A stretch of 63,888 bases of DNA, counting the filler, from Octopus bimaculoides (lineage: Eukaryota), in assembly GCF_001194135.2 (NCBI RefSeq). It is 7 parts of 7 records of this genome, joined end to end, with 100 filler letters (N's around TTAATTAATTAA, not from the genome) between each part and the next. Parts side by side here need not be neighbours in the genome. Positions count along the whole stretch, not along the records: positions 1 to 19,308 come from NC_068999.1; 6 more parts are not named here. One strand, written 5' to 3'. The notes beneath the pieces are model-generated. The model had not been told where the DNA came from. It searched no databases and saw only the letters and a list, made by a program, of their open reading frames with translations. Made by a program: the position numbers and the translations under genes. The number at the start of each line of letters is the position of its first letter. Position 1 is the first letter of the stretch. Of this stretch, positions 1 to 19,352 are shown piece by piece.

Positions 1-82
1 TTATTGTTATTGTTATTGTTATTGTTATTGTTATTGTTATTGTTATTGTTATTGTTATTGTTATTATTATTATTATTATTAT
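1..82. repeat. (TTATTG)n/(TTA)n microsatellite
   Basis: Direct reading. Confidence 0.95.
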
Positions 83-83
83 C

Positions 84-291
84 AAGGCGGCAAGCTGGCA
101 GAATCGTTAGCGCGCCGTACGAAATGCTTAGTGGCATTTCGCCCGTCGCTACATTCTGAGTTCAAATTCCGCCGACTTTAACTTTCATTCTTTCAGGGTC
201 AATAAAATAAGTACCAGTTGAAAACTAGGGTCGATGTAAATCGACTCATCTCTACCTCCAAATTTGCTGCTCTTGTGGCAAAATTTGAAAC

Positions 292-358
<67 letters not shown>

Positions 359-582: not shown

Positions 583-1648
583 CTTTATTTCATATACGCA
601 CAATAGTTTAAACTGATAGAAAAGAAAAATTCCTAACATCGGGCTACAATAATCTTAGATGCTAAGAACCTTCTTAAGTATTCTGGCTGTCCCTAATAAT
701 ACTGTTTTCTGGAGCTGCACTAAACTAAATTTTATGCCTATTTCCTCTATTCATCAGTTCAAATCTGTTTGGGATAGTTCCTAATGCACCTATAACTACT
801 GGGATAAATTTTACCCGCACTTTCCATAGCCTCAGTATCTCAATGGCTAGGTCCTGGTACTTTGCTATTTTCTCTTTACCTCTCATATTGACTTTCTCAC
901 CATTTACGACTGCAAAGTCTATTACCTGGAACTTTCTATTCTCTTTGTTTACTTTTACTAAATCAGGCTTTCTAGCTTCTATTACTCTGTCAGTCTGAAT
1001 GTTAAAATCCCTCAATCTATATTTCTTACTCTTCAGCACTTTACTAGGTTCATGTTCATACTACTTATCAGTATGATCAAATCCTAGCTTTCTGTATAAC
1101 TCCCAGTGGATTACTCTTCTTAGGTTGTCATGTCTTTTCTTGTATTTTTTTCTGTGACAGCATGCTACATTCGCTTACTCTATGAGTAACACTTTCCTAT
1201 TTTGATGTACATAACCTACATTGGGAATCTACCTGGCCTTTTCCCCATTAGTCCTCAATGCTTGATCTCGTGTTGCGACTAACAAACTTTCTGTCTCTCT
1301 TTTCAGCTTTCCTTTCTGCAACCATTACCATGTCTCACTATTACTATTTCCTTAAACTATCTTTAGGAATCTGCCATGCAAAGCCTTCTCTTGCCAGTCA
1401 GATATTCCTACCTCTTATTTTTAGCTTTTAATTTCATTTGGCTTTTAGGTTTCCCCGTCTTCTACTGCTGCTCTACTACCTCTTCATAAGATTTATTCAC
1501 TGTTACCTACATAGGAAGCTATATGTACTCTAGCTAACTCCACGCAGTCTTCTACTAATATTAACCTTCTAATATCTTCCTTTCAAGGTAAGTATAATCT
1601 TGCTAATCCTGCTCTTGGGTGACGTCCTCCATTCATATGGAATTCCTG
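583..1648 (-). mobile_element. 5'-truncated R4/Dong-like non-LTR retrotransposon (RT C-terminus, CCHC finger, RLE endonuclease)
   Basis: ORF 725-1039 has DFNIQTDRVIEARKPDLV...VIDFAV...KIAKYQDLAIEILRLWKVRVKFIPVVIGALGTIP (PD-(D/E)xK RLE). Upstream are degenerate H.RAGLARLYLP and RHDNLRRVIHWEL. 3' end abuts a TAA tract. Confidence 0.85.
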
Positions 1649-2217
1649 TTATTACCTCAGTCTTCGCGAAGGCGGAGGTATTGTTTTCTGTCGTTTGTTT
1701 GTTTATATGTATATATATGGACAAGATATCTCAAGAAACGCTGGATGGATTCGGATGAAACTTTCAGAGAAGTTTGACCTTGTGACTAGCACGGTCTCAT
1801 TAGATTTTGGGATCGATCAGCTATCGGACAAGGATTCTGGATTATTTTTCTACTTTACACGTATATGTAAAGTTTCACTTAGTTCTCTTGTACATGCACA
1901 CATATACACACGTATACTCACACATTTTCAGCGTTTAAACATTACCATTCCACTTCCATTGTACACACACACACGCGCACAAACATACCTCTCATTTATA
2001 CACACATATGCTCGCACTTCAAACGCCGTGTATCGGCTTTGTCACTCCTTTCGCTATTCGTCTATCACCCCTTCCTTTCTCATTCATACGACGCTCTCTC
2101 TCCCACTTCGTTTCTTTCTCAATGTCATTACTTTCTCTCACTCCCTTTCAGTCACTATTTCACCTTCACTGCATTAGTATTTCATCTCCTCTCCCTTCAC
2201 CTCTTAATACCTAATTT

Positions 2218-2608
2218 AGTTACTGTTAATACCTAATTTAGAGAATTAACATTGCTTGTTTTCACTTTTTCGATATCAGTGAAGAATTTCACTGGAAAAA
2301 GGTACATAAGGTTGCCAAGAATTTATCTCTCTCATCGCAGATCGGTGGCTATCGGACGCTGACGAAGGGAAATAACCCTGAAACCCGGGTCCGTCCGTGC
2401 TACAGATCACGATGAGAGGGATAACTTCCCTTGGCAAAACAAACAAGACACAGAAGTTTGTCGATAAGCCAGCTGGAGGAGATGTCCTCCTGGGGCTAAA
2501 AGCAACAGTAACATCCACCCCTAGGGGTCAGCCACATTTAAGTGGCAATATACTTCACTTTATCGTGCAGTTACTGTTAATACCTAATTTAGAGAATTAA
2601 CATTGCTT
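2218..2608 (+). mobile_element. Retrozyme-like unit: 351-nt HHR-containing monomer plus 40-nt terminal redundancy
   Basis: AGTTACTGTTAATACCTAATTTAGAGAATTAACATTGCTT is identical at 2218-2257 and 2569-2608. The interior carries a canonical HHR and several hairpins. Confidence 0.7.
2353..2397 (+). ncRNA. Type I hammerhead ribozyme, canonical core
   Basis: Stem I CGGACG/CGTCCG; CTGACGA; stem II AGGG-AAATAA-CCCT; GAAA; minimal stem III C-CCGG-G with palindromic loop; GTC cleavage triplet (C2391). Confidence 0.9.
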
Positions 2609-2830
2609 ATATATATATATATAATTGGATTATTTTTCGTTTGAGAACGCTCGGGTTCATTCTTAGCATTCTCGTTTGTGAGAGCAATCCAGTTTATTTA
2701 AGATAATCTCAATTTAAAAATCATCTTCGGCTAATCTTTGAGAGGACGTTCGTGCTGCCTCGACGGAGGTTTGCGCTCTCTGAGTGCTCTTGTTATTATT
2801 GTTATTATTGTTATTATTGTTATTATTAGA

Positions 2831-3044
2831 AAGGCGGTGAGCTGGCAGAATCGTTAGCACGCTGGACGAAATGCTTAGCGGTATTTCGCCCGTCGCTCCG
2901 TTCTGAGTTCAAATGCCGCCGAAAATGACTTTGCCTTTCATCCTTTCAGGGTCGATAAATTAAGTACTAGTGAAACACTGGGGTCGATGTAATCGACTAG
3001 TCCTCTTCCCCCAAAATTCAGGCCTTGTGTTTATTGTAGAAAGG
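2831..3044 (+). mobile_element. SINE family A
   Basis: Same head and core; tail GGCCTTGTGTTTATTGTAGAAAGG then (ATT)n. Confidence 0.85.
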
Positions 3045-3230
3045 ATTATTATCATTATTATATTTAAATATTCATGTAAATACTCGTGATTAAAGATCTC
3101 CCAAGAAAATTATTTTCTTACATTATCCGATAGACAATAAATTTTTATCGTCACTTTAATTGTGGACTATTTAATTAAATCTTTCAGTTTATTCATCCGT
3201 ATGCAGAAGAAAAGTTCGTTCTTTTGCTAA

Positions 3231-4092
3231 ACATTCACTGCTTTCTTTGTTCCTGTTTCAAAATGGCAACCGCAGCGCGAAAGGAAAGGGATTGCTAGTC
3301 CAATTAGTAATAGGGGTTACAGTGTTGGAAACGATATATACACCCATTACATTTTCAAATACAAAATCAAACTTTTTAAGACAGACAATATGACAATTAA
3401 ACCACAAAACCTTCTAGTATTAATATCAACACTTACACAGCAAAACTCTACAAAAGCAGCGAAAACCTTAATTAACACTGATAATATCTTGTGTTATGGT
3501 TTCGCCACAAGGCACTCGAGCTACATATTGCGTCAACAAGAAACCAGTAGCTAGCGGCGAGCTGGCAGAGATACCGCGAAGCATTTCGCCGAGCGAAATG
3601 TCTAGCGTTTATTTCGTCTGCCGCGACTTTCTGAGTTCAAATTTCGCCGAGGTCGACTTTGCCTTTTATCATTTCGGGGTTGATTAAATAAGTACCAGTT
3701 ACGCACTGGGGTCGATATAATCGACTTAATCCGTTTGTCTGTCCTTGTTTGTCCCTTCTATGTTTAGCCTCCTGTAGGCAATAAAGAAAACAGAAACCAG
3801 TAACCGTACCTTTAATATGTCAGACACCATCTTTGGGTCTGCGCTTGCCTGTAACCATGGCAATGACGGAAATTACCTCAAGTGACAATTTCGTTTACTG
3901 GAAAAGATTATCATCCTCCTCAAAGATGAAAATGGACAAAACACTAACTACGACTTACTATGTATTTGTTTGTATGATAAATATCTGCCTAAAAATTATA
4001 AGCAAGACCCACCTCAATCAAATCCAAACCATTACGATAAAGGCTGGAGAGTAAACCAAAGACGCTTCGTAAGTAACCCACAATCCGTATAA
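3231..4092 (+). pseudogene. SINE-interrupted ~200-codon reading frame, possibly a decayed ORF1 of a non-LTR element
   Basis: Removing SINE 3550-3791 and one copy of TSD AGAAACCAGTA gives one frame 3231-4092 with a single internal TGA (3883). An AAAATGGC start at 3263 lies one frame off. No family motif recognised. Confidence 0.4.
3550..3791 (+). mobile_element. SINE family A, long-tail variant with 11-bp TSD
   Basis: TSD AGAAACCAGTA at 3539-3549 and 3792-3802; tail TTTGTCCCTTCTATGTTTAGCC...GCAATAAAGAAA. Confidence 0.9.
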
Positions 4093-4169: not shown

Positions 4170-4913
4170 NNNNNNNNNNNNNNNNNNNNNNNNNNNNNNN
4201 NNNNNNNNNNNNNNNNNNNNNNNNNNNNNNNNNNNNNNNNNNNNNNNNNNNNNNNNNNNNNNNNNNNNNNNNNNNNNNNNNNNNNNNNNNNNNNNNNNNN
4301 NNNNNNNNNNNNNNNNNNNNNNNNNNNNNNNNNNNNNNNNNNNNNNNNNNNNNNNNNNNNNNNNNNNNNNNNNNNNNNNNNNNNNNNNNNNNNNNNNNNN
4401 NNNNNNNNNNNNNNNNNNNNNNNNNNNNNNNNNNNNNNNNNNNNNNNNNNNNNNNNNNNNNNNNNNNNNNNNNNNNNNNNNNNNNNNNNNNNNNNNNNNN
4501 NNNNNNNNNNNNNNNNNNNNNNNNNNNNNNNNNNNNNNNNNNNNNNNNNNNNNNNNNNNNNNNNNNNNNNNNNNNNNNNNNNNNNNNNNNNNNNNNNNNN
4601 NNNNNNNNNNNNNNNNNNNNNNNNNNNNNNNNNNNNNNNNNNNNNNNNNNNNNNNNNNNNNNNNNNNNNNNNNNNNNNNNNNNNNNNNNNNNNNNNNNNN
4701 NNNNNNNNNNNNNNNNNNNNNNNNNNNNNNNNNNNNNNNNNNNNNNNNNNNNNNNNNNNNNNNNNNNNNNNNNNNNNNNNNNNNNNNNNNNNNNNNNNNN
4801 NNNNNNNNNNNNNNNNNNNNNNNNNNNNNNNNNNNNNNNNNNNNNNNNNNNNNNNNNNNNNNNNNNNNNNNNNNNNNNNNNNNNNNNNNNNNNNNNNNNN
4901 NNNNNNNNNNNNN

Positions 4914-7243: not shown

Positions 7244-8140
7244 CGAGGGGGTGCCCAAACTAACCGGAAACGTTCACCGTTATAGTTTGGGCTTCCGCTG
7301 TTAGAAGCCACTTGATATGACCCTCAGGCACCAGTCTGCCGACCGGCGGCGTCCACTAAGGTCATACTGCCACGTTGTTTATCTTTATTTTGCAGTGCTT
7401 CTCCGCTGTTCGTCGATTTCTGCGATGGTTGAAACGAAGAAACAGCGTGCTTCCGTGAAATTCTGTTTTCTGCTGGGGGAAAACGGCGGCCGTAACAGTT
7501 TTCATGCTTTATACAGCTTACAAGGCCGCTGTCATGAGCAATACACAAGTTTATGAGTAATTTTCACGTTTTAGGAATGATCACTTATCACTTGAGGACC
7601 TACTCAGTTCAAAGCGATCGTCGGCCTCCCGAACAAATGAAAACATCATGAAAATTCATGAACTGATATTGGAAGACCGTCACCGAACAATTGACGAATT
7701 TGTTGATATGACTGGGGTGTCTTGGAGCTTCTGCTATTGAATTTTGAACAAGGAATTGTGAAAGAAAAGAGTTGTAGCAAAATTTGTGCCTCACTTGCTC
7801 ACAGAAGATCAAAAGCAGTCACGAGTGAAAGCGTGTCGTGAACTGAAAGAAGAGTTGGAAGTTGATCCAGAACTTTTTTCGAAGGTCATCACTGGTGACG
7901 AAAGCTGGTGCTGCGGAATTTGCCAATGTGGAAGTGGTGAAGAAAAAAAAAAAAAGGAGGGAGGTGTTAAAAGGCATTACTTCGCAAGAGTTCCAGGATT
8001 GCTTCGAACAATGGAAAACGCGTTTGGATCAATGCATTGCTTCAAATGGAGAATACTTTGAAGGCGATGAAAAGGTAAACATGTAAAACTAAATGAATAA
8101 AAAATATTGCAAAATTCCGATTTCTTTTGGGTAACCCTCG
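7244..8140 (+). mobile_element. Internally deleted mariner (DD34D-type) element with both TIRs
   Basis: TIRs CGAGGGGGTGCCCAAA...CCGGAA and TTCCGA...TTTTGGGTAACCCTCG-TA. Frameshifted transposase pieces KQRASVKFCFLLG, KFVPHLLTEDQKQSRV, FSKVITGDESWC, CIASNGEYFEGD. Confidence 0.9.
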
Positions 8141-8241
8141 TATGAATGTACGTATGTATGTATGTATGTATGTATGTATGTATGTATGTATGTATGTATG
8201 TATGTATGTATGCATACATACGTACGATATATATATATATA

Positions 8242-9280
8242 CGTGCGAGACTCACGTGGAATGTGACCAAATGAGGTTTAGTTTTCAACATAGTCTCACT
8301 TGGGGCCCGTGCACTTCTTCCACCGGTGCTGCAGTGCTTGAATCCAATTGGTGAAGAAGATTTCATCCTGTTGGTAAAAAAAAACAATAGTAGATATGAC
8401 GACATCATCTCTGCGATACGGGTTCCCAGCCAAGTGTTTTTCGCGTTGGGGAACAAATGATAGTTAGATGGGGCCAAATCAGAAGAAAACGAAAGATGAT
8501 CACCCAGTCCAATGCCACACTCATGCACAGCAGCCATTGAAAGCAGGGACTTTTGTGCTGGAGAATTGTCCTGATAAAGCATTCGTCAGTTTTCTTGGAC
8601 GTTTGGTCTTGACAGCCTTTCATAATTACCTCAGTAAGTAGGCATCACACTCTTTACTGATGATGTGGCCCTTTTAAAGATAATCAATAAACACAAAAAT
8701 CTGAGCTATCACCTTTCCTGCAAATGAAGCAACCTTGGTCTTGTTTGGAGCGGGTAAGGAGGGGTGTTTCTATTGCATGGACCGTCTCTTTGTCTCTGGC
8801 TCAAAGTGATGAAGCCAACACTCATTCTGGATTAGGAAACGTTTAACGAAACAAGCTGGATCTGCTTCAAACAATGTCAGATTTCCCTGTGATGTGATCA
8901 TCTTGATGCACTTTTGATCAGATGTCAGAAAACGTAGCATTCGTTGAAAAGCAACTTTCGTTATGCCAAGTTCATTGTGCAGAATATTCTCAACTCTCTC
9001 ATGGGATATGCTAATAGCACTGGCTATTTGATTTATAGTTAACCGCCTGTCATCCATCACCACCAATGGTTTCCTCGGTGTTAGCAGTTGCAGTACGTTC
9101 AGACCTTGTGTTATTTTCAAGACTCTCCCTTCTCTTAAATTCTGCCACCCACTTTTGTACCGTTGATAAAGCTTGAGATTCATCCCCTTATGTACCAACC
9201 ATGTCAGCATGAATGTCGTTGGAGACTAAACCGTTTTTCTTCTGGTACTTGACAACAACACGATGCCAAATTTTGTCGAG
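8242..9280 (-). mobile_element. Decayed mariner transposase, a different lineage (Himar1/Hsmar2-like)
   Basis: VMDDRRLTINQIASAISISHERVENILHNELG, WLHHFEPETKRRSMQ, LYQDNSPAQKSL...FSSDLAPSNYHLFPN, terminal DYVEN. Frameshifted; ends in TA at 8240-8241. Confidence 0.9.
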
Positions 9281-12624: not shown

Positions 12625-13840
12625 ACACACAATGCCAAAATTTGGTACGAGTCCTTCCCCGATTTTCCAGATGTACATCACTGCATATCTTTCCCACTTT
12701 CGTTCTGGGGAGTAGAGTCTTAACTCTTTCAGCCTTTCCTAGTAGCTGAAGCGTTGCATTGAAACGATCTTCTTTGTTCGTTGGATTGCTTCGAGTTCTG
12801 CCGTGAATTTTATACTGTGCTGATCATAGTTGGGAGCAGCAATACAAGCGGCTGAGGACATATGTTCTGCAAAGAACCTTCATAGTTTCCTTTTCTCTCG
12901 TTCTGAAAGTTCGGTGGATCCATCCAGCGAGCGGTTTGCATTTTATTGCCAAATTAGTTATATGTACCTGGAAAGAGGCATCATTCCTCATGTCAATGCC
13001 CTGGTTATTCACTGATTTTCATTCAAGGATTGCAATTCCTCGTGAGCCAGTGTATCCTGTCTGAATATCATTCAGCTTTGTGGTGGTAGCGTAGGGCTTG
13101 TAATTTTCCTGCATTAAACAGCATCTTATTCTCCTCAACTCATTTGTATGTTATGTCCAACTCCCGTTGCAGACGCGCATTATTTCCAAGGTTCTGTATC
13201 GTCTGAAAAATTTGTCTTATCTGCATAGCTAGCAAGGCTGGCAATCTGAACCGCTGAGGACATGTCTGAAAGGGTCATTATGAATAGCAGTGGCCCTAAG
13301 ACAGTGCCCTGTGGAGCGCCACTTGCTATTTATGTTTCCTTTGAGGTGGCTCCATTGGCCACTACTGCCCGACTTCTATCTTTAAGAAAATCGTGTAGCC
13401 ACTCACCAAGTTTTTCGATTATGCTGAGATAATGCAGTTTGTAACATATCATACCATGGTCGACTTTATCGAAGGCTTTTGCAAAGTCGAGATATATCGC
13501 ATCTACACTTGATTGGTCGAGCAGCTGCCCAGTCGTAATGCTGTAAGAGCTGTGTCAGGCAGCTTCTACCTGGTCAAAAACCATGCTGGGTGTCAGTCAG
13601 CAAGTCATTCTCTTCAAGAAACACAATTAGATTCCTGCGGACTATTCAGTCCATGACTATGTTGATGTGTGAGGTCAGAGAGACAGGCCTATAATTTTTA
13701 ACATCTACTCTGTTTTCTTCTTTGTGGATAGGGCATATTATTTCCTTCTTCAATTTACCTGGGAGCTTACCACTTGCTAAGAAGGTCTGAAAAAGAAGCA
13801 AGGGTTCACTTGCATGATTTGAGAAGGATTGCTGAGAATC
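12625..13840 (-). mobile_element. CR1-group LINE reverse transcriptase fragment (pseudogenised)
   Basis: ICPIHK...KNYRPVSLTS, QHGF.PGRSCLTQL, YLDFAKAFDKVDH, SGAPQGTVLGPLLFI, ASYAD, GWIHRTFRTR, YIWKIGEGLVPNFGI. Confidence 0.85.
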
Positions 13841-13976
13841 TATGATATGTCTGTATATATATATATATATATATGTGTGNNNNNNNNNNNNNNNNNNNNN
13901 NNNNNNNNNNNNNNNNNNNNNNNNNNNNNNNNNNNNNNNNNNNNNNNNNNNNNNNNNNNNNNNNNNNNNNNNNNNN

Positions 13977-15388: not shown

Positions 15389-15720
15389 NNNNNNNNNNNN
15401 NNNNNNNNNNNNNNNNNNNNNNNNNNNNNNNNNNNNNNNNNNNNNNNNNNNNNNNNNNNNNNNNNNNNNNNNNNNNNNNNNNNNNNNNNNNNNNNNNNNN
15501 NNNNNNNNNNNNNNNNNNNNNNNNNNNNNNNNNNNNNNNNNNNNNNNNNNNNNNNNNNNNNNNNNNNNNNNNNNNNNNNNNNNNNNNNNNNNNNNNNNNN
15601 NNNNNNNNNNNNNNNNNNNNNNNNNNNNNNNNNNNNNNNNNNNNNNNNNNNNNNNNNNNNNNNNNNNNNNNNNNNNNNNNNNACCACCACCACCACCACC
15701 ACCACCACCACCACTAACAT

Positions 15721-17414: not shown

Positions 17415-18400
17415 TATCTCAGACATGACGTCAGTTATGCAGTCAACTACACTCACTAGCAATGCTGACGACACAAAGGTATCGCAAATAGTCAAGAATC
17501 TTCTCGATGCCAATCTTCTACAGAAAAAGCCAGACGATATATAAATAGGCTGAAGAAAATATGATGCAATATAAAGCAGGAAAATTCCAGATCAGTTATC
17601 TTCTACTATCACATTGCCACAAAGAAACTTTGGATAAAAAGAAGCGGCAATCCAAGAGTCAAACTCAGTGCGTAACTTGAGGATCGATATGAGCAGCGAT
17701 GATGCATCGTTTCATATACATATTACTAAGATGCTGGCAATGTGCAGAGGATGGATTCGGAAAACTTTCGGAACACTGGACCAGGAAATTATGCCTGTTA
17801 CTATGGAGGATATATGTTCACAGCCGTCTGGATTACTGCTCATAACTATGGCCAGTCACATGGTCAATTTAATGACGGAAGTCGTTGCAGTTCATTGGTG
17901 CTACAGACGGCATCAATGAAACACTTCAACTATTGGAAGAAACTAAAAGCATTACGATTCTACTCTCTGGAGAGAAGACAGAAGAGATATGTAGGTGATA
18001 TACACATGGCAGATCCTAGAGGGGCTAGTACCAAACTTTATCAACGAGAATTATACCAGCCTCCGAACAGGACACGTCTGCACTGTTCCAAAGACCCCTC
18101 CCATACCGTCCAGTATAATATTCAGGTACTGCTATAGCTTGTGATTCAAAGGCTCACAGCTATTTCAGATCTGAAAGATTTAGATGGCGTGGGGATAGAT
18201 CTTCTCAAGAAGGACATTGACTTTCTGTTATCCAAGATCCCAGATGAACCGATATCATGTTAAGAAACTCAGTGGGAAAGCAATATCAAATTCCCTTAGT
18301 CATCGAAAGCCAATCATATAGGAATGACCATTGAAAAGGTGATGATATTGGTGGTGCCCCAGCATAACTACAACTTTTAGGTCAAAAGGCATAAGAAACA
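17415..18400 (+). mobile_element. CR1-group LINE 3' fragment (same family as 12625-13840)
   Basis: TLTSNADDTKVSQ, SDDASFHIHITKM...GWIRKTF, NYWKKLKALRFYSLERRQKRY. Confidence 0.8.
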
Positions 18401-18401
18401 G

Positions 18402-18432
<31 letters not shown>

Positions 18433-18715
18433 TGCTGTTTCAGATGTGCTCATTATGGATGAACAAAAGTGTTACATCATGCTAAAAGATAAAAAAAGTT
18501 TTCTTCGAGTAAATACAGAGAAGATTTATCAAGTAGAAATTCTCACTAAATAGAACATAGTGTAAAACGACACAACAAACTTGATTAGGGCAGGTAGAGT
18601 GCGTAGCGGAAGTTTATATCAATGCTTCCGCTATTCACTGTCCTAGTCGTGTGGGGTGTGTGTGTGTGCCTGTCAGTGGGCATGTATAAATATTTTCATC
18701 TATTTTGCCCAGTAT

Positions 18716-18772
18716 GTTTTACTGATGAAGGAAGAGTTATCAAACTTATCCAGAAATTGATCAATCTAGAAC
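18716..18772 (+). ncRNA. Type I hammerhead motif, intact core, extended stem II
   Basis: GTTTTA/TAGAAC stem I; CTGATGA; A-GGA..(AGTT-ATCA-AACT)..TCC-A; GAAA; palindromic stem III TT-GATC-AA; ATC triplet. Stem II closing pair is an A.A mismatch. Confidence 0.7.
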
Positions 18773-19352
18773 TATCTGAATTACTTTATGAATCTTTGGT
18801 CGGTCCACTTTTCCCGCTTTCAACCGGTGTATATTGAAGTTAAACTTATAGTGGTTGGATGTATTTGGCGTCACTTTCTAGCATTTGTATTCTATACAAT
18901 TATATATCTCTATATATGAATTTTACCTAAAAGATTATTTTTATATGCTGACCACTGATAAAATTCATTGATTTTAATTATTTTATCCTTTAATTATGTT
19001 AAGTTATATATATATATAATTAATCAAAGGACATTCTAAGTATGTCTACCTGCTTGAAATAACAGTCAAAACTCATTATTAAATCGCCAAAAATACACTG
19101 GTGTTAACTACAGAAATCAAACGAAGGAAAATTTGGTTAAGACAATCTACTTACGTATATTTAAGTATTTGGATTTACGTGGACTAGTTTCTGCATTGAC
19201 AAAATAAGCCTTAGTTTCATTGGATAATAATAGAATTAACGATCTCTTTGTAAATTAATTAATTATATATATATATAATTAATCAAAGGACATTCTAAGT
19301 ATGTCTACNNNNNNNNNNNNNNNNNNNNNNNNNNNNNNNNNNNNNNNNNNNN

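What the first reader, a model, noticed from the sequence alone, without database searches (positions are those of the whole stretch)
2218..2608. Canonical hammerhead ribozyme inside a 351-nt monomer with a perfect 40-nt terminal repeat: candidate active retrozyme
Seen: all core nucleotides (CUGACGA, GAAA, GUC) and perfect stems I and II. Stem I extends past an internal loop (GTGGC/GCTAC). Stem III is minimal with a palindromic CCGG loop. The rest of the unit is hairpin-rich (CAGTGAA/TTCACTG, GGAGGA/TCCTCC, ACCCCTAGGGGT, GCCAC/GTGGC). Known: type I HHRs with short palindromic helix III occur in Penelope-like elements and in non-coding non-LTR retrozymes of a few hundred nt that form circular RNAs, and they often cleave as dimers. 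Inference: one monomer plus a short redundancy is what slightly more than one round of reverse transcription on a circle leaves. The identical repeats suggest a young copy.
Basis: partly seen in the sequence, partly recalled or inferred. Interest (0 to 1): 0.9.

Follow-up and report, generated by a model that had tools for sequence, protein, structure and literature searches.

The report
Solo hammerhead retrozyme copy in octopus
This is a real, intact-looking self-cleaving hammerhead RNA motif inside one 351-base copy of a small non-coding jumping element in an octopus genome, a known kind of element not yet described in cephalopods, and this copy alone cannot make the RNA circle.

Summary
A perfect 40-nt direct repeat (2218-2257 = 2569-2608) brackets a 351-nt unit. 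The unit carries one type I hammerhead (2353-2397, cleavage after C2391).

A covariance model built from four experimentally validated retrozyme hammerheads (coral, mussel, two axolotl) hits it end to end at 28.8 bits, E about 1e-6, with all 13 modelled pairs standard. Rfam does not report it, but a control showed Rfam also misses textbook hammerheads.

The 8-nt palindrome ACCCGGGU predicts a dimer-dependent ribozyme, and the unit folds far better than shuffles (z -6.4).

The host is an octopus: one further, diverged copy survives as a spurious Octopus bimaculoides protein.

The locus holds 1.11 units and one ribozyme, so it cannot excise a monomer. It is best read as a dead-end offspring copy of a non-LTR retrozyme family.

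Its 40-nt extension and its insertion next to (TA)8 match the "tail" and AT-rich target of Penelope-like element integration. The circle-template idea remains possible but is not distinguishable from a multimeric template here.

It is a new member of a known kind. Genome-wide copy number and RNA circles could not be tested.

The parts
2201..2219 (+). 5' junction stutter: an extra partial copy (18/19 identical) of 2223-2241, joined to the unit at an AG microhomology
   Evidence: reading of the sequence
2218..2257 (+). Terminal repeat, copy 1 (the first 40 nt of the unit)
   Evidence: Identical to 2569-2608. Its GUUACUGUU (2219-2227) is complementary to 2505-2513 and closes the rod in the circular fold.
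2218..2568 (+). 351-nt non-coding unit (monomer), GC 43.9%
   Evidence: Circular MFE -117.7 kcal/mol against -79.9 +/- 5.9 for shuffles, z -6.4. The longest stop-free stretch in a circular reading is 83 codons. GC.
2319..2428 (+). Long imperfect hairpin that carries the hammerhead at its tip (an extension of helix I)
   Evidence: 19-nt arms, 89% complementary. MFE -52.8 kcal/mol, z -6.3.
2353..2397 (+). Type I hammerhead ribozyme: helix I 6 bp, CUGACGA, helix II 4 bp plus loop AAAUAA, GAAA, helix III 2 bp plus loop CCGG (8-nt palindrome ACCCGGGU)
   Evidence: dimer fold
2391..2392 (+). Predicted self-cleavage site (after C17 = C2391)
   Evidence: Position of GUC relative to the core. Not tested biochemically.
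2569..2608 (+). Terminal repeat, copy 2: a 40-nt extension into a second unit ('tail')
   Evidence: compared with the PLE tail of 30-40 bp
2608..2623 (.). (TA)8 microsatellite at the 3' junction, the probable AT-rich target
   Evidence: PLE targets are AT-rich or (TA)n.

Best explanation
The locus (2201/2218-2608) is a single, slightly longer-than-unit-length insertion of a small non-coding retroelement of the non-LTR retrozyme kind, in an octopus genome.

Shown:
- It carries one structurally intact type I hammerhead of the canonical metazoan architecture.
- Its helix III is too weak to hold in a monomer, but it is an 8-nt palindrome that can pair with a second copy to form a double hammerhead.
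- The unit is non-coding, AT-biased and strongly self-paired.
- The insert runs through the ribozyme cleavage site without a break and repeats its first 40 nt at its end.

Inferred:
- Because the cDNA crosses the cleavage site and exceeds one unit, the RNA template was circular or multimeric, not a cleaved linear monomer.
- Reverse transcription was primed at an AT-rich nick, now (TA)8 at 2608-2623. It ran leftwards for 391 nt and ended with a small template-switch stutter (2201-2219).
- The most likely enzyme is a Penelope-like element RT/endonuclease. Its insertions characteristically carry a 30-40 bp tail, form partial tandems and land in AT-rich or (TA)n DNA, and such elements are present in octopus genomes.
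[quoted passage not shown] So this copy is a dead-end offspring and not a source of 351-nt circles, unless the short-read assembly has collapsed a longer array.
For: Ribozyme:
- Core and helices read directly from the sequence.
- Sole descriptor hit in the window, with 3 equally good hits in 2000 shuffles.
- Top hit of a model built from 18 phage hammerheads (19.1 bits, E about 3e-4).
- Top hit of a model built from four experimentally validated retrozyme hammerheads (28.8 bits, E about 9e-7, full length, no non-standard pair).
- The architecture matches the published definition of canonical metazoan type I hammerheads: helix I 6 bp, helix II 4 bp, helix III 1-2 bp with a palindromic 2-4 nt loop.
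- The mussel retrozyme has the analogous palindrome ACGCGCGU and axolotl has ACACGUGU.

Dimer:
- Cofold gives -66.9 kcal/mol against 2 x -28.1, with an 8-bp intermolecular helix III and both cores free. The active fold of a monomer costs +5.0 kcal/mol.

Unit:
- z -6.4 for the circular fold, GC 43.9%, no ORF or Pfam domain.

The 40 nt belong to the element:
- A 9-nt helix joins them to the interior. Only 2.9% of shuffled 40-mers do as well.

Family:
- A spurious 54-aa Octopus bimaculoides protein aligns to the minus strand of 2348-2514 with 7 substitutions and a 5-nt indel.

Integration signature:
- A 40-nt extension, (TA)8 at the junction, and the literature on the PLE tail, partial tandems and AT-rich targets.
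- PLEs are present and partly young in octopus.
- Monomers are regarded as non-transposing offspring.
Against: - Only one other copy could be reached, and only as a protein, so family size, consensus ends and the tail reading are untested.
- No target-site duplication or empty site was identified.
- The 10.1-11.1 pair is A-U instead of the highly conserved G-C, so activity may be reduced. An axolotl retrozyme hammerhead with a U.U mismatch there still cleaves as a dimer.
- Rfam reports no hammerhead family here.
- The RT initiation region of the one PLE studied in vitro is an AC-rich stem-loop. Nothing like that is evident at 2568 or 2608.
- The scaffold has N gaps at microsatellites, so the copy number at this locus could be understated.
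Confidence: 0.62

Rival explanations
1. The true locus is a multi-unit tandem array (an expressible retrozyme). The short-read assembly collapsed it to the shortest path through the repeat, leaving 1.11 units.
For: The scaffold has three N gaps, all next to microsatellites, so it is a short-read assembly. Identical tandem units of 351 bp cannot be spanned by short reads. Retrozymes are typically found as tandem arrays.
Against: There is no gap or ambiguity at the locus itself. The 5' junction carries a private stutter (2201-2219), which looks like a real integration junction. Monomeric copies are common in retrozyme families.
Confidence: 0.15
2. The element is a fragment of an autonomous Penelope-like element (a solo pseudo-LTR or a severely 5'-truncated copy), not a separate non-autonomous family.
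For: PLE pseudo-LTRs carry type I hammerheads, insertions are often 5'-truncated partial tandems with a 30-40 bp tail, and vertebrate retrozymes are sequence relatives of pLTRs. A second, PLE-style minimal hammerhead-like motif lies at 18716-18772 in the same window.
Against: The redundancy closes after 351 nt, so the repeating unit of the template held no ORF. There is no RT or GIY-YIG signature anywhere in the window. The hammerhead has the full canonical architecture with helix III and loops, whereas metazoan PLE hammerheads are minimal variants.
Confidence: 0.1
3. The 40-nt repeats are a long target-site duplication of host DNA flanking a 311-nt insertion (2258-2568).
For: PLE target-site duplications are of variable length, and retrozyme TSDs are said to be larger than 4 bp. 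The 40-mer is AT-rich like the flank.
Against: The 40-mer forms a 9-bp helix with the interior that closes the rod (2.9% by chance). An extra partial copy of its middle lies just upstream, which fits template switching better than host sequence. 40 nt is at the top of reported ranges.
Confidence: 0.07
4. The hammerhead-like motif is a chance match in duplicated non-coding DNA and has no ribozyme activity.
For: Rfam gives no hit. By my shuffles an equally good descriptor match arises about 1.5e-3 times per 18 kb, which extrapolates to hundreds per gigabase-scale genome. The 10.1-11.1 pair is atypical.
Against: Rfam also fails on textbook hammerheads. There is a full-length 28.8-bit match to validated retrozyme ribozymes. 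The palindromic helix III, the internal loop after 6 bp of helix I and the 110-nt carrier hairpin are not part of the descriptor, yet all are present. Unit size and fold are typical of retrozymes.
Confidence: 0.04

Closest known systems
Non-LTR retrozyme of the mussel Mytilus galloprovincialis (Mg353; Cervera & de la Pena 2020, PMC7229834)
   Same: Both hosts are molluscs. Unit size is 353 versus 351 nt. Both are non-coding, AT-biased units with one type I hammerhead: 6-bp helix I, 4-bp helix II and an 8-nt palindromic helix III (ACGCGCGU versus ACCCGGGU). Both predicted RNAs are highly self-paired.
   Different: There is no primary-sequence similarity outside the ribozyme core. The mussel element occurs in arrays and is shown to make abundant circles, whereas here there is one unit with a 40-nt overhang and no expression data. 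The mussel has G10.1-C11.1; here it is A-U.
Newt/axolotl satellite 2 retrozymes (Rtz_331, Rtz_353)
   Same: Units of 330-350 nt. [quoted passage not shown] HHR_Amex2 also lacks a G-C pair at the base of helix II.
   Different: The hosts are vertebrates with up to about 120,000 copies in long arrays. The sequences are unrelated.
Penelope-like element insertions (pseudo-LTR, tail, AT-rich target; Craig et al. 2021, Frangieh et al. 2024)
   Same: A partial-tandem look, a 30-40 bp extension at one end, integration next to (TA)n or AT-rich DNA, and a type I hammerhead with a palindromic helix III.
   Different: There is no RT/GIY-YIG ORF here. The unit is 351 nt. The hammerhead is the canonical form rather than the minimal PLE variant.
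Schistosoma Sm-alpha SINE-like element with hammerhead
   Same: A short non-autonomous retroposon carrying a canonical type I hammerhead, with an internal loop in helix I and a 6-nt loop 2. From my memory of the crystallised Schistosoma sequence, its loops are UAC/U and CAAAUA, against UAU/U and AAAUAA here.
   Different: The Schistosoma ribozyme is fast as a monomer, and it comes from a different phylum. The loop comparison rests on memory and was not tested.

Membership tests
Hammerhead ribozyme, type I (canonical metazoan form) | Conserved core: C3 U4 G5 A6 N7 G8 A9, G12 A13 A14, A15.1-U16.1, H17 | tested here: met
   CUGACGA 2359-2365, GAAA 2380-2383, U2390, C2391
Hammerhead ribozyme, type I (canonical metazoan form) | Helix I open; helices II and III capped. 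Helix I 6 bp then an internal loop, helix II 4 bp, helix III 1-2 bp with a palindromic 2-4 nt loop (PMC4209133) | tested here: met
   6 bp + UAU/U loop, 4 bp + AAAUAA, 2 bp + CCGG
Hammerhead ribozyme, type I (canonical metazoan form) | G10.1-C11.1 pair at the base of helix II | tested here: not met
   A2366-U2379. U11.1 is also kept in the second copy (Q codon in P0001). There is a precedent for deviation: the U.U mismatch in the axolotl HHR_Amex2.
Hammerhead ribozyme, type I (canonical metazoan form) | Reaches the gathering score of Rfam RF00163 | tested here: not met
   No hit even at E<=10. Control: three textbook phage hammerheads score 22.7-26.5 bits, below gathering, or are not reported at all, so this test has little power.
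Hammerhead ribozyme, type I (canonical metazoan form) | Significant full-length match to covariance models built from independent hammerheads | tested here: met
   R1 (phage hammerheads): 19.1 bits, E about 3e-4. R2 (validated retrozyme hammerheads): 28.8 bits, E about 9e-7.
Hammerhead ribozyme, type I (canonical metazoan form) | Site-specific self-cleavage | not testable with these tools
   Needs in vitro transcription of monomer and dimer constructs.
Non-LTR retrozyme (Cervera & de la Pena 2020) | Non-coding unit of about 170-400 nt with a type I hammerhead, GC below 50%, no LTR/PBS/PPT | tested here: met
   351 nt, GC 43.9%, no ORF over 83 codons, no Pfam domain
Non-LTR retrozyme (Cervera & de la Pena 2020) | Tandem copies, so that two ribozymes flank a unit | tested here: not met
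   1.11 units and one hammerhead at this locus, and no other copy in the window. Assembly collapse is not excluded.
Non-LTR retrozyme (Cervera & de la Pena 2020) | Predicted stable, highly self-paired circular RNA | tested here: met
   -117.7 kcal/mol, z -6.4, 63% of bases paired
Non-LTR retrozyme (Cervera & de la Pena 2020) | Multicopy family in the genome | tested here: inconclusive
   One further diverged copy, seen through Octopus bimaculoides protein A0A0L8IHK6. No cephalopod genome was searchable.
Non-LTR retrozyme (Cervera & de la Pena 2020) | Expressed as linear and circular RNA of unit length | not testable with these tools
   Needs RNA-seq junction reads, northern blots or RNase R treatment.
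Non-LTR retrozyme (Cervera & de la Pena 2020) | Co-occurrence with Penelope-like elements in the host | not tested
   From the literature only: Penelope families, some young, in O. vulgaris and O. bimaculoides.
Penelope-like element (pseudo-LTR remnant) | Adjacent ORF with RT and GIY-YIG endonuclease | tested here: not met
   No YxDD or GIY-YIG motif in six frames of the window. No Pfam RT or endonuclease hit.
Penelope-like element (pseudo-LTR remnant) | 30-40 bp tail at one end and an AT-rich or microsatellite target | tested here: met
   40-nt extension 2569-2608 and (TA)8 at 2608-2623. This is a single locus, so it is a resemblance and not proof.

The most novel reading that the evidence does not exclude
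This may be the first cephalopod retrozyme family, still live in octopus and producing 351-nt RNA circles. Its junctions (a 40-nt tail, a (TA)n target, a template-switch stutter) may be direct footprints of the two-site internal initiation of a Penelope-like reverse transcriptase on a retrozyme template. That would identify the long-suspected mobiliser of animal retrozymes from insertion anatomy.
Probability: 0.3. Interest if true: 0.55.

Novelty: new member of a known kind. Interest (0 to 1): 0.35.

Why it matters
Animal retrozymes are known from cnidarians, a mussel, amphibians and other groups. I found no description of them in cephalopods in the searchable literature.

The published view is that retrozyme repeats carry no motif that reveals which autonomous element moves them. 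A clean one-unit insertion with readable junctions is the kind of copy that can answer that question. If many octopus copies end at two sites 40 nt apart, next to AT-rich DNA, that would tie retrozymes to Penelope-like enzymes by mechanism and not only by co-occurrence.

Practically, the unit offers a compact, dimer-gated hammerhead scaffold from a new phylum branch. By itself, however, this locus is an ordinary dead-end copy.

Tried and rejected
- Rfam at gathering score and at E<=10 on 551 nt and on 78 nt gave no hammerhead. I then showed with phage hammerheads that Rfam's models are insensitive and replaced this test with my own covariance models.
- Looking for more copies failed by every route:
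  - exact-pattern scans of IMG/VR, JGI metagenomes and GTDB genomes found nothing related; the first, loose pattern gave 10 viral matches in which Rfam found no hammerhead, so I take them as chance;
  - exact-protein look-ups of four ORFs of the window and of P0001 found no contig;
  - a chimeric six-frame query overflowed the candidate list and returned nothing;
  - the +2 frame found nothing;
  - the +0 frame against 1.8 billion representatives found only unrelated bacterial repeat proteins.
- No second copy lies within the window.
- There is no similarity to the mussel retrozyme outside the ribozyme.
- I considered and rejected a coding function (no frame is open around the circle), a tRNA-derived SINE (no tRNA) and a microRNA hairpin (mir-2329 at 18.6 bits against a cut-off of 90, which merely reflects the long hairpin).
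- No ribozyme was found on the minus strand.

Full report
**What is in the sequence**

The window is eukaryotic. It is rich in microsatellites, SINE-like repeats and decayed transposon ORFs, and it has three N gaps.

At the reported place, 2218-2257 and 2569-2608 are identical over 40 nt, 351 nt apart. The bases immediately outside differ.

Between the repeats lies one hammerhead:
- helix I: CGGACG 2353-2358 / CGUCCG 2392-2397
- core: CUGACGA 2359-2365
- helix II: AGGG/CCCU with loop AAAUAA
- GAAA 2380-2383
- helix III: A2383-U2390 and C2384-G2389 around CCGG
- C17 = 2391

Helix I continues past a UAU/U internal loop into GUGGC/GCUAC, and on into a hairpin with 19-nt arms (2319-2337 / 2410-2428). 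That hairpin folds at -52.8 kcal/mol, against -30.6 for shuffles, z -6.3.

**Is it more than chance?**

- A hammerhead descriptor that I wrote finds this site and nothing else on either strand. In 2000 dinucleotide shuffles of the window there were 27 relaxed hits and only 3 with helices as good.
- Rfam reports no hammerhead family at its gathering score, nor at E<=10 even when given only 78 nt. I tested what that silence means. A pattern scan of viral contigs returned dozens of textbook phage hammerheads with covarying helices. None reached an Rfam gathering score. In contig L090, which has three of them, the best scores were 22.7-26.5 bits and one was not reported at all. Rfam's silence therefore weighs little.
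- I built a covariance model from 18 of those phage hammerheads. It ranks 2353-2397 first in the window (19.1 bits, E about 3e-4, full length).
- I then took the four retrozyme constructs whose self-cleavage was shown experimentally (coral, mussel, two axolotl; supplement of PMC7229834), cut out their hammerheads and built a second model. It matches 2353-2397 end to end at 28.8 bits, E about 9e-7, with every modelled pair a standard pair. The E-values from the shortened calibration are rough.

**What kind of hammerhead**

The published description of canonical metazoan type I hammerheads is helix I of 6 bp, helix II of 4 bp, and helix III of 1-2 bp capped by a palindromic 2-4 nt loop. Such ribozymes are inefficient alone and active as dimers. 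This one fits on every count.

ACCCGGGU is a perfect 8-nt palindrome, like ACGCGCGU in the mussel retrozyme and ACACGUGU in axolotl. Two copies of 2340-2410 cofold at -66.9 kcal/mol, against -56.2 for two monomers, with an 8-bp intermolecular helix III and both cores unpaired. Forcing the active fold in a monomer costs 5.0 kcal/mol.

The one departure is A10.1-U11.1 in place of the conserved G-C. The axolotl HHR_Amex2 has a U.U mismatch there and still cleaves well as a dimer.

**The unit**

The 351-nt monomer has 43.9% GC. It has no reading frame open around the circle; the longest stop-free stretch is 83 codons. No ORF across it has homologues apart from one spurious gene model.

As a circle it folds at -117.7 kcal/mol, against -79.9 +/- 5.9 for shuffles (z -6.4). 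The minus strand folds as well but has no ribozyme. This matches the size range (170-400 nt), base composition and self-pairing reported for animal non-LTR retrozymes.

**Host and relatives**

The only homologue reachable is a 54-aa 'uncharacterized protein' of Octopus bimaculoides (A0A0L8IHK6). It aligns to the minus-strand translation of 2514-2440 and 2437-2348, with a 5-nt indel and 7 substitutions, which needs at least 8 base changes in 162 nt.

So the host is an octopus and the family has at least one further, diverged copy. Assuming the fewest base changes, that copy carries G2389A (16.2), C2391A (17) and C2395U (1.4). These changes break the helix III palindrome, so that copy looks decayed. 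It keeps U at 11.1, so the unusual base pair is a family trait.

No cephalopod genome is in the searchable DNA collections, so copy number is unknown.

**Anatomy of the insertion**

- The insert crosses the ribozyme cleavage site without a break and is 40 nt longer than one unit. The template was therefore a circle or a multimer, not a cleaved linear monomer (inference).
- The 3' end abuts (TA)8.
- At the 5' end there is an extra 19-nt segment (2201-2219), 18/19 identical to 2223-2241 and joined at an AG shared by both contexts. I read this as a template-switch stutter at the end of cDNA synthesis (inference).
- The 40-mer pairs over 9 nt with 2505-2513 and closes the rod. Only 2.9% of shuffled 40-mers do as well. 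This argues that the 40-mer belongs to the element and is not duplicated target DNA.

**How this compares with what is known**

Penelope-like elements form partial tandems, often carry an optional 30-40 bp 'tail' at one end, and prefer AT-rich or (TA)n targets. In vitro, a Penelope-like RT starts at two adjacent internal sites of a multi-copy RNA. The tail is the stretch between those sites, and ribozyme cleavage is not needed.

Penelope families, some young, are present in octopus genomes. Retrozymes have long been suspected to use these enzymes, but their repeats were said to show no motif that reveals the mobiliser. A 2026 preprint links vertebrate retrozymes to pLTRs by phylogeny and treats monomeric copies as offspring that cannot transpose.

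The present locus has the tail length and the target type expected of Penelope-like integration. It is not attached to any RT or GIY-YIG ORF.

One locus cannot separate 'tail' from 'a little more than one turn round a circle'. They are the same observation until many copies are aligned.

**Verdict**

With one ribozyme and 1.11 units, this copy cannot release a monomer or a circle.

'Young' is supported only to the extent that divergence between the repeats is below about 7%.

The main caveat is that a short-read scaffold could have collapsed an array.

It is a new member of a known kind, of moderate interest. The useful follow-up is a genome-wide census of copy ends in long-read octopus assemblies, together with RNA evidence for circles.

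Noticed in passing
window 18716-18772 (+): A second hammerhead-like motif: GUUUUA CUGAUGA A-GGAAGAGUU-AUCA-AACUUAUCC-A GAAA UUGAUCAA U C UAGAAC. It has a 6-bp helix I, a long helix II with one A.A mismatch, no helix III loop, and a perfect 10-nt palindrome AUUGAUCAAU. This resembles the minimal hammerheads of Penelope-like pseudo-LTRs, apart from an extra A before G12. It ranks second with both models (17.8 bits, E about 9e-4; 15.4 bits, E about 0.011). The local fold is not significant (z -1.2).
   Followed up: partly
window 19004-19308: A perfect 46-nt direct repeat (19004-19049 = 19263-19308, period 259), each copy starting with (TA)6. It is cut off by the end of the piece. It may be another partial tandem or 'unit plus extension' insertion at a TA microsatellite. 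No hammerhead lies in it.
   Followed up: partly
window 18405-18433 and 19005-19018: Two (TA)n tracts bracket about 570 nt that contain the second hammerhead-like motif, as if an element had split a TA microsatellite.
   Followed up: no
window 43-312, 320-590, 2790-3060, 3610-3726: Four copies (63-85% identical) of a repeat of about 270 nt, most copies preceded by a (TTA/TTG)n microsatellite. They are probably an octopus SINE. One copy begins only 180 nt downstream of the retrozyme copy. ARAGORN finds no tRNA in them.
   Followed up: partly
window 4170-4913, 13880-13976, 15389-15682: Assembly gaps (runs of N), each flanked by microsatellites. The piece is a short-read scaffold, so tandem repeats may be collapsed.
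   Followed up: yes
window 13646-13800 (-), 725-1039 (-), 7786-9210 (-), 17742-18137 (+): Decayed transposon ORFs. By eye there is a LINE-type RT fragment with the NYRPVSL motif, a possible retrotransposon C-terminal fragment, and mariner-like transposase remnants (DLAPSNYHLF). Pfam gives no significant hit for any of the ORFs submitted (725-1039, 7786-8061, 7977-8582, 8770-9210, 17742-18137); the 13646-13800 fragment could not be scanned.
   Followed up: partly
window 2321-2426 (+): Weak Rfam match to the mir-2329 precursor (18.6 bits against a cut-off of 90). It reflects only the long hairpin that carries the hammerhead.
   Followed up: yes
L090 852-1661 (-), L012 15-1384 (+), L122 2403-3881 (+), L045 964-2170 (+): Viral (IMG/VR) contigs with three or four textbook hammerheads each. 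They share helix I sequences and have covarying helices II and III, spaced a few hundred nt apart. In L090 (the only contig scanned at E<=10) the best Rfam scores were 22.7-26.5 bits, below gathering, and L012 also gave no Rfam hit; L122 and L045 were not scanned with Rfam.
   Followed up: partly
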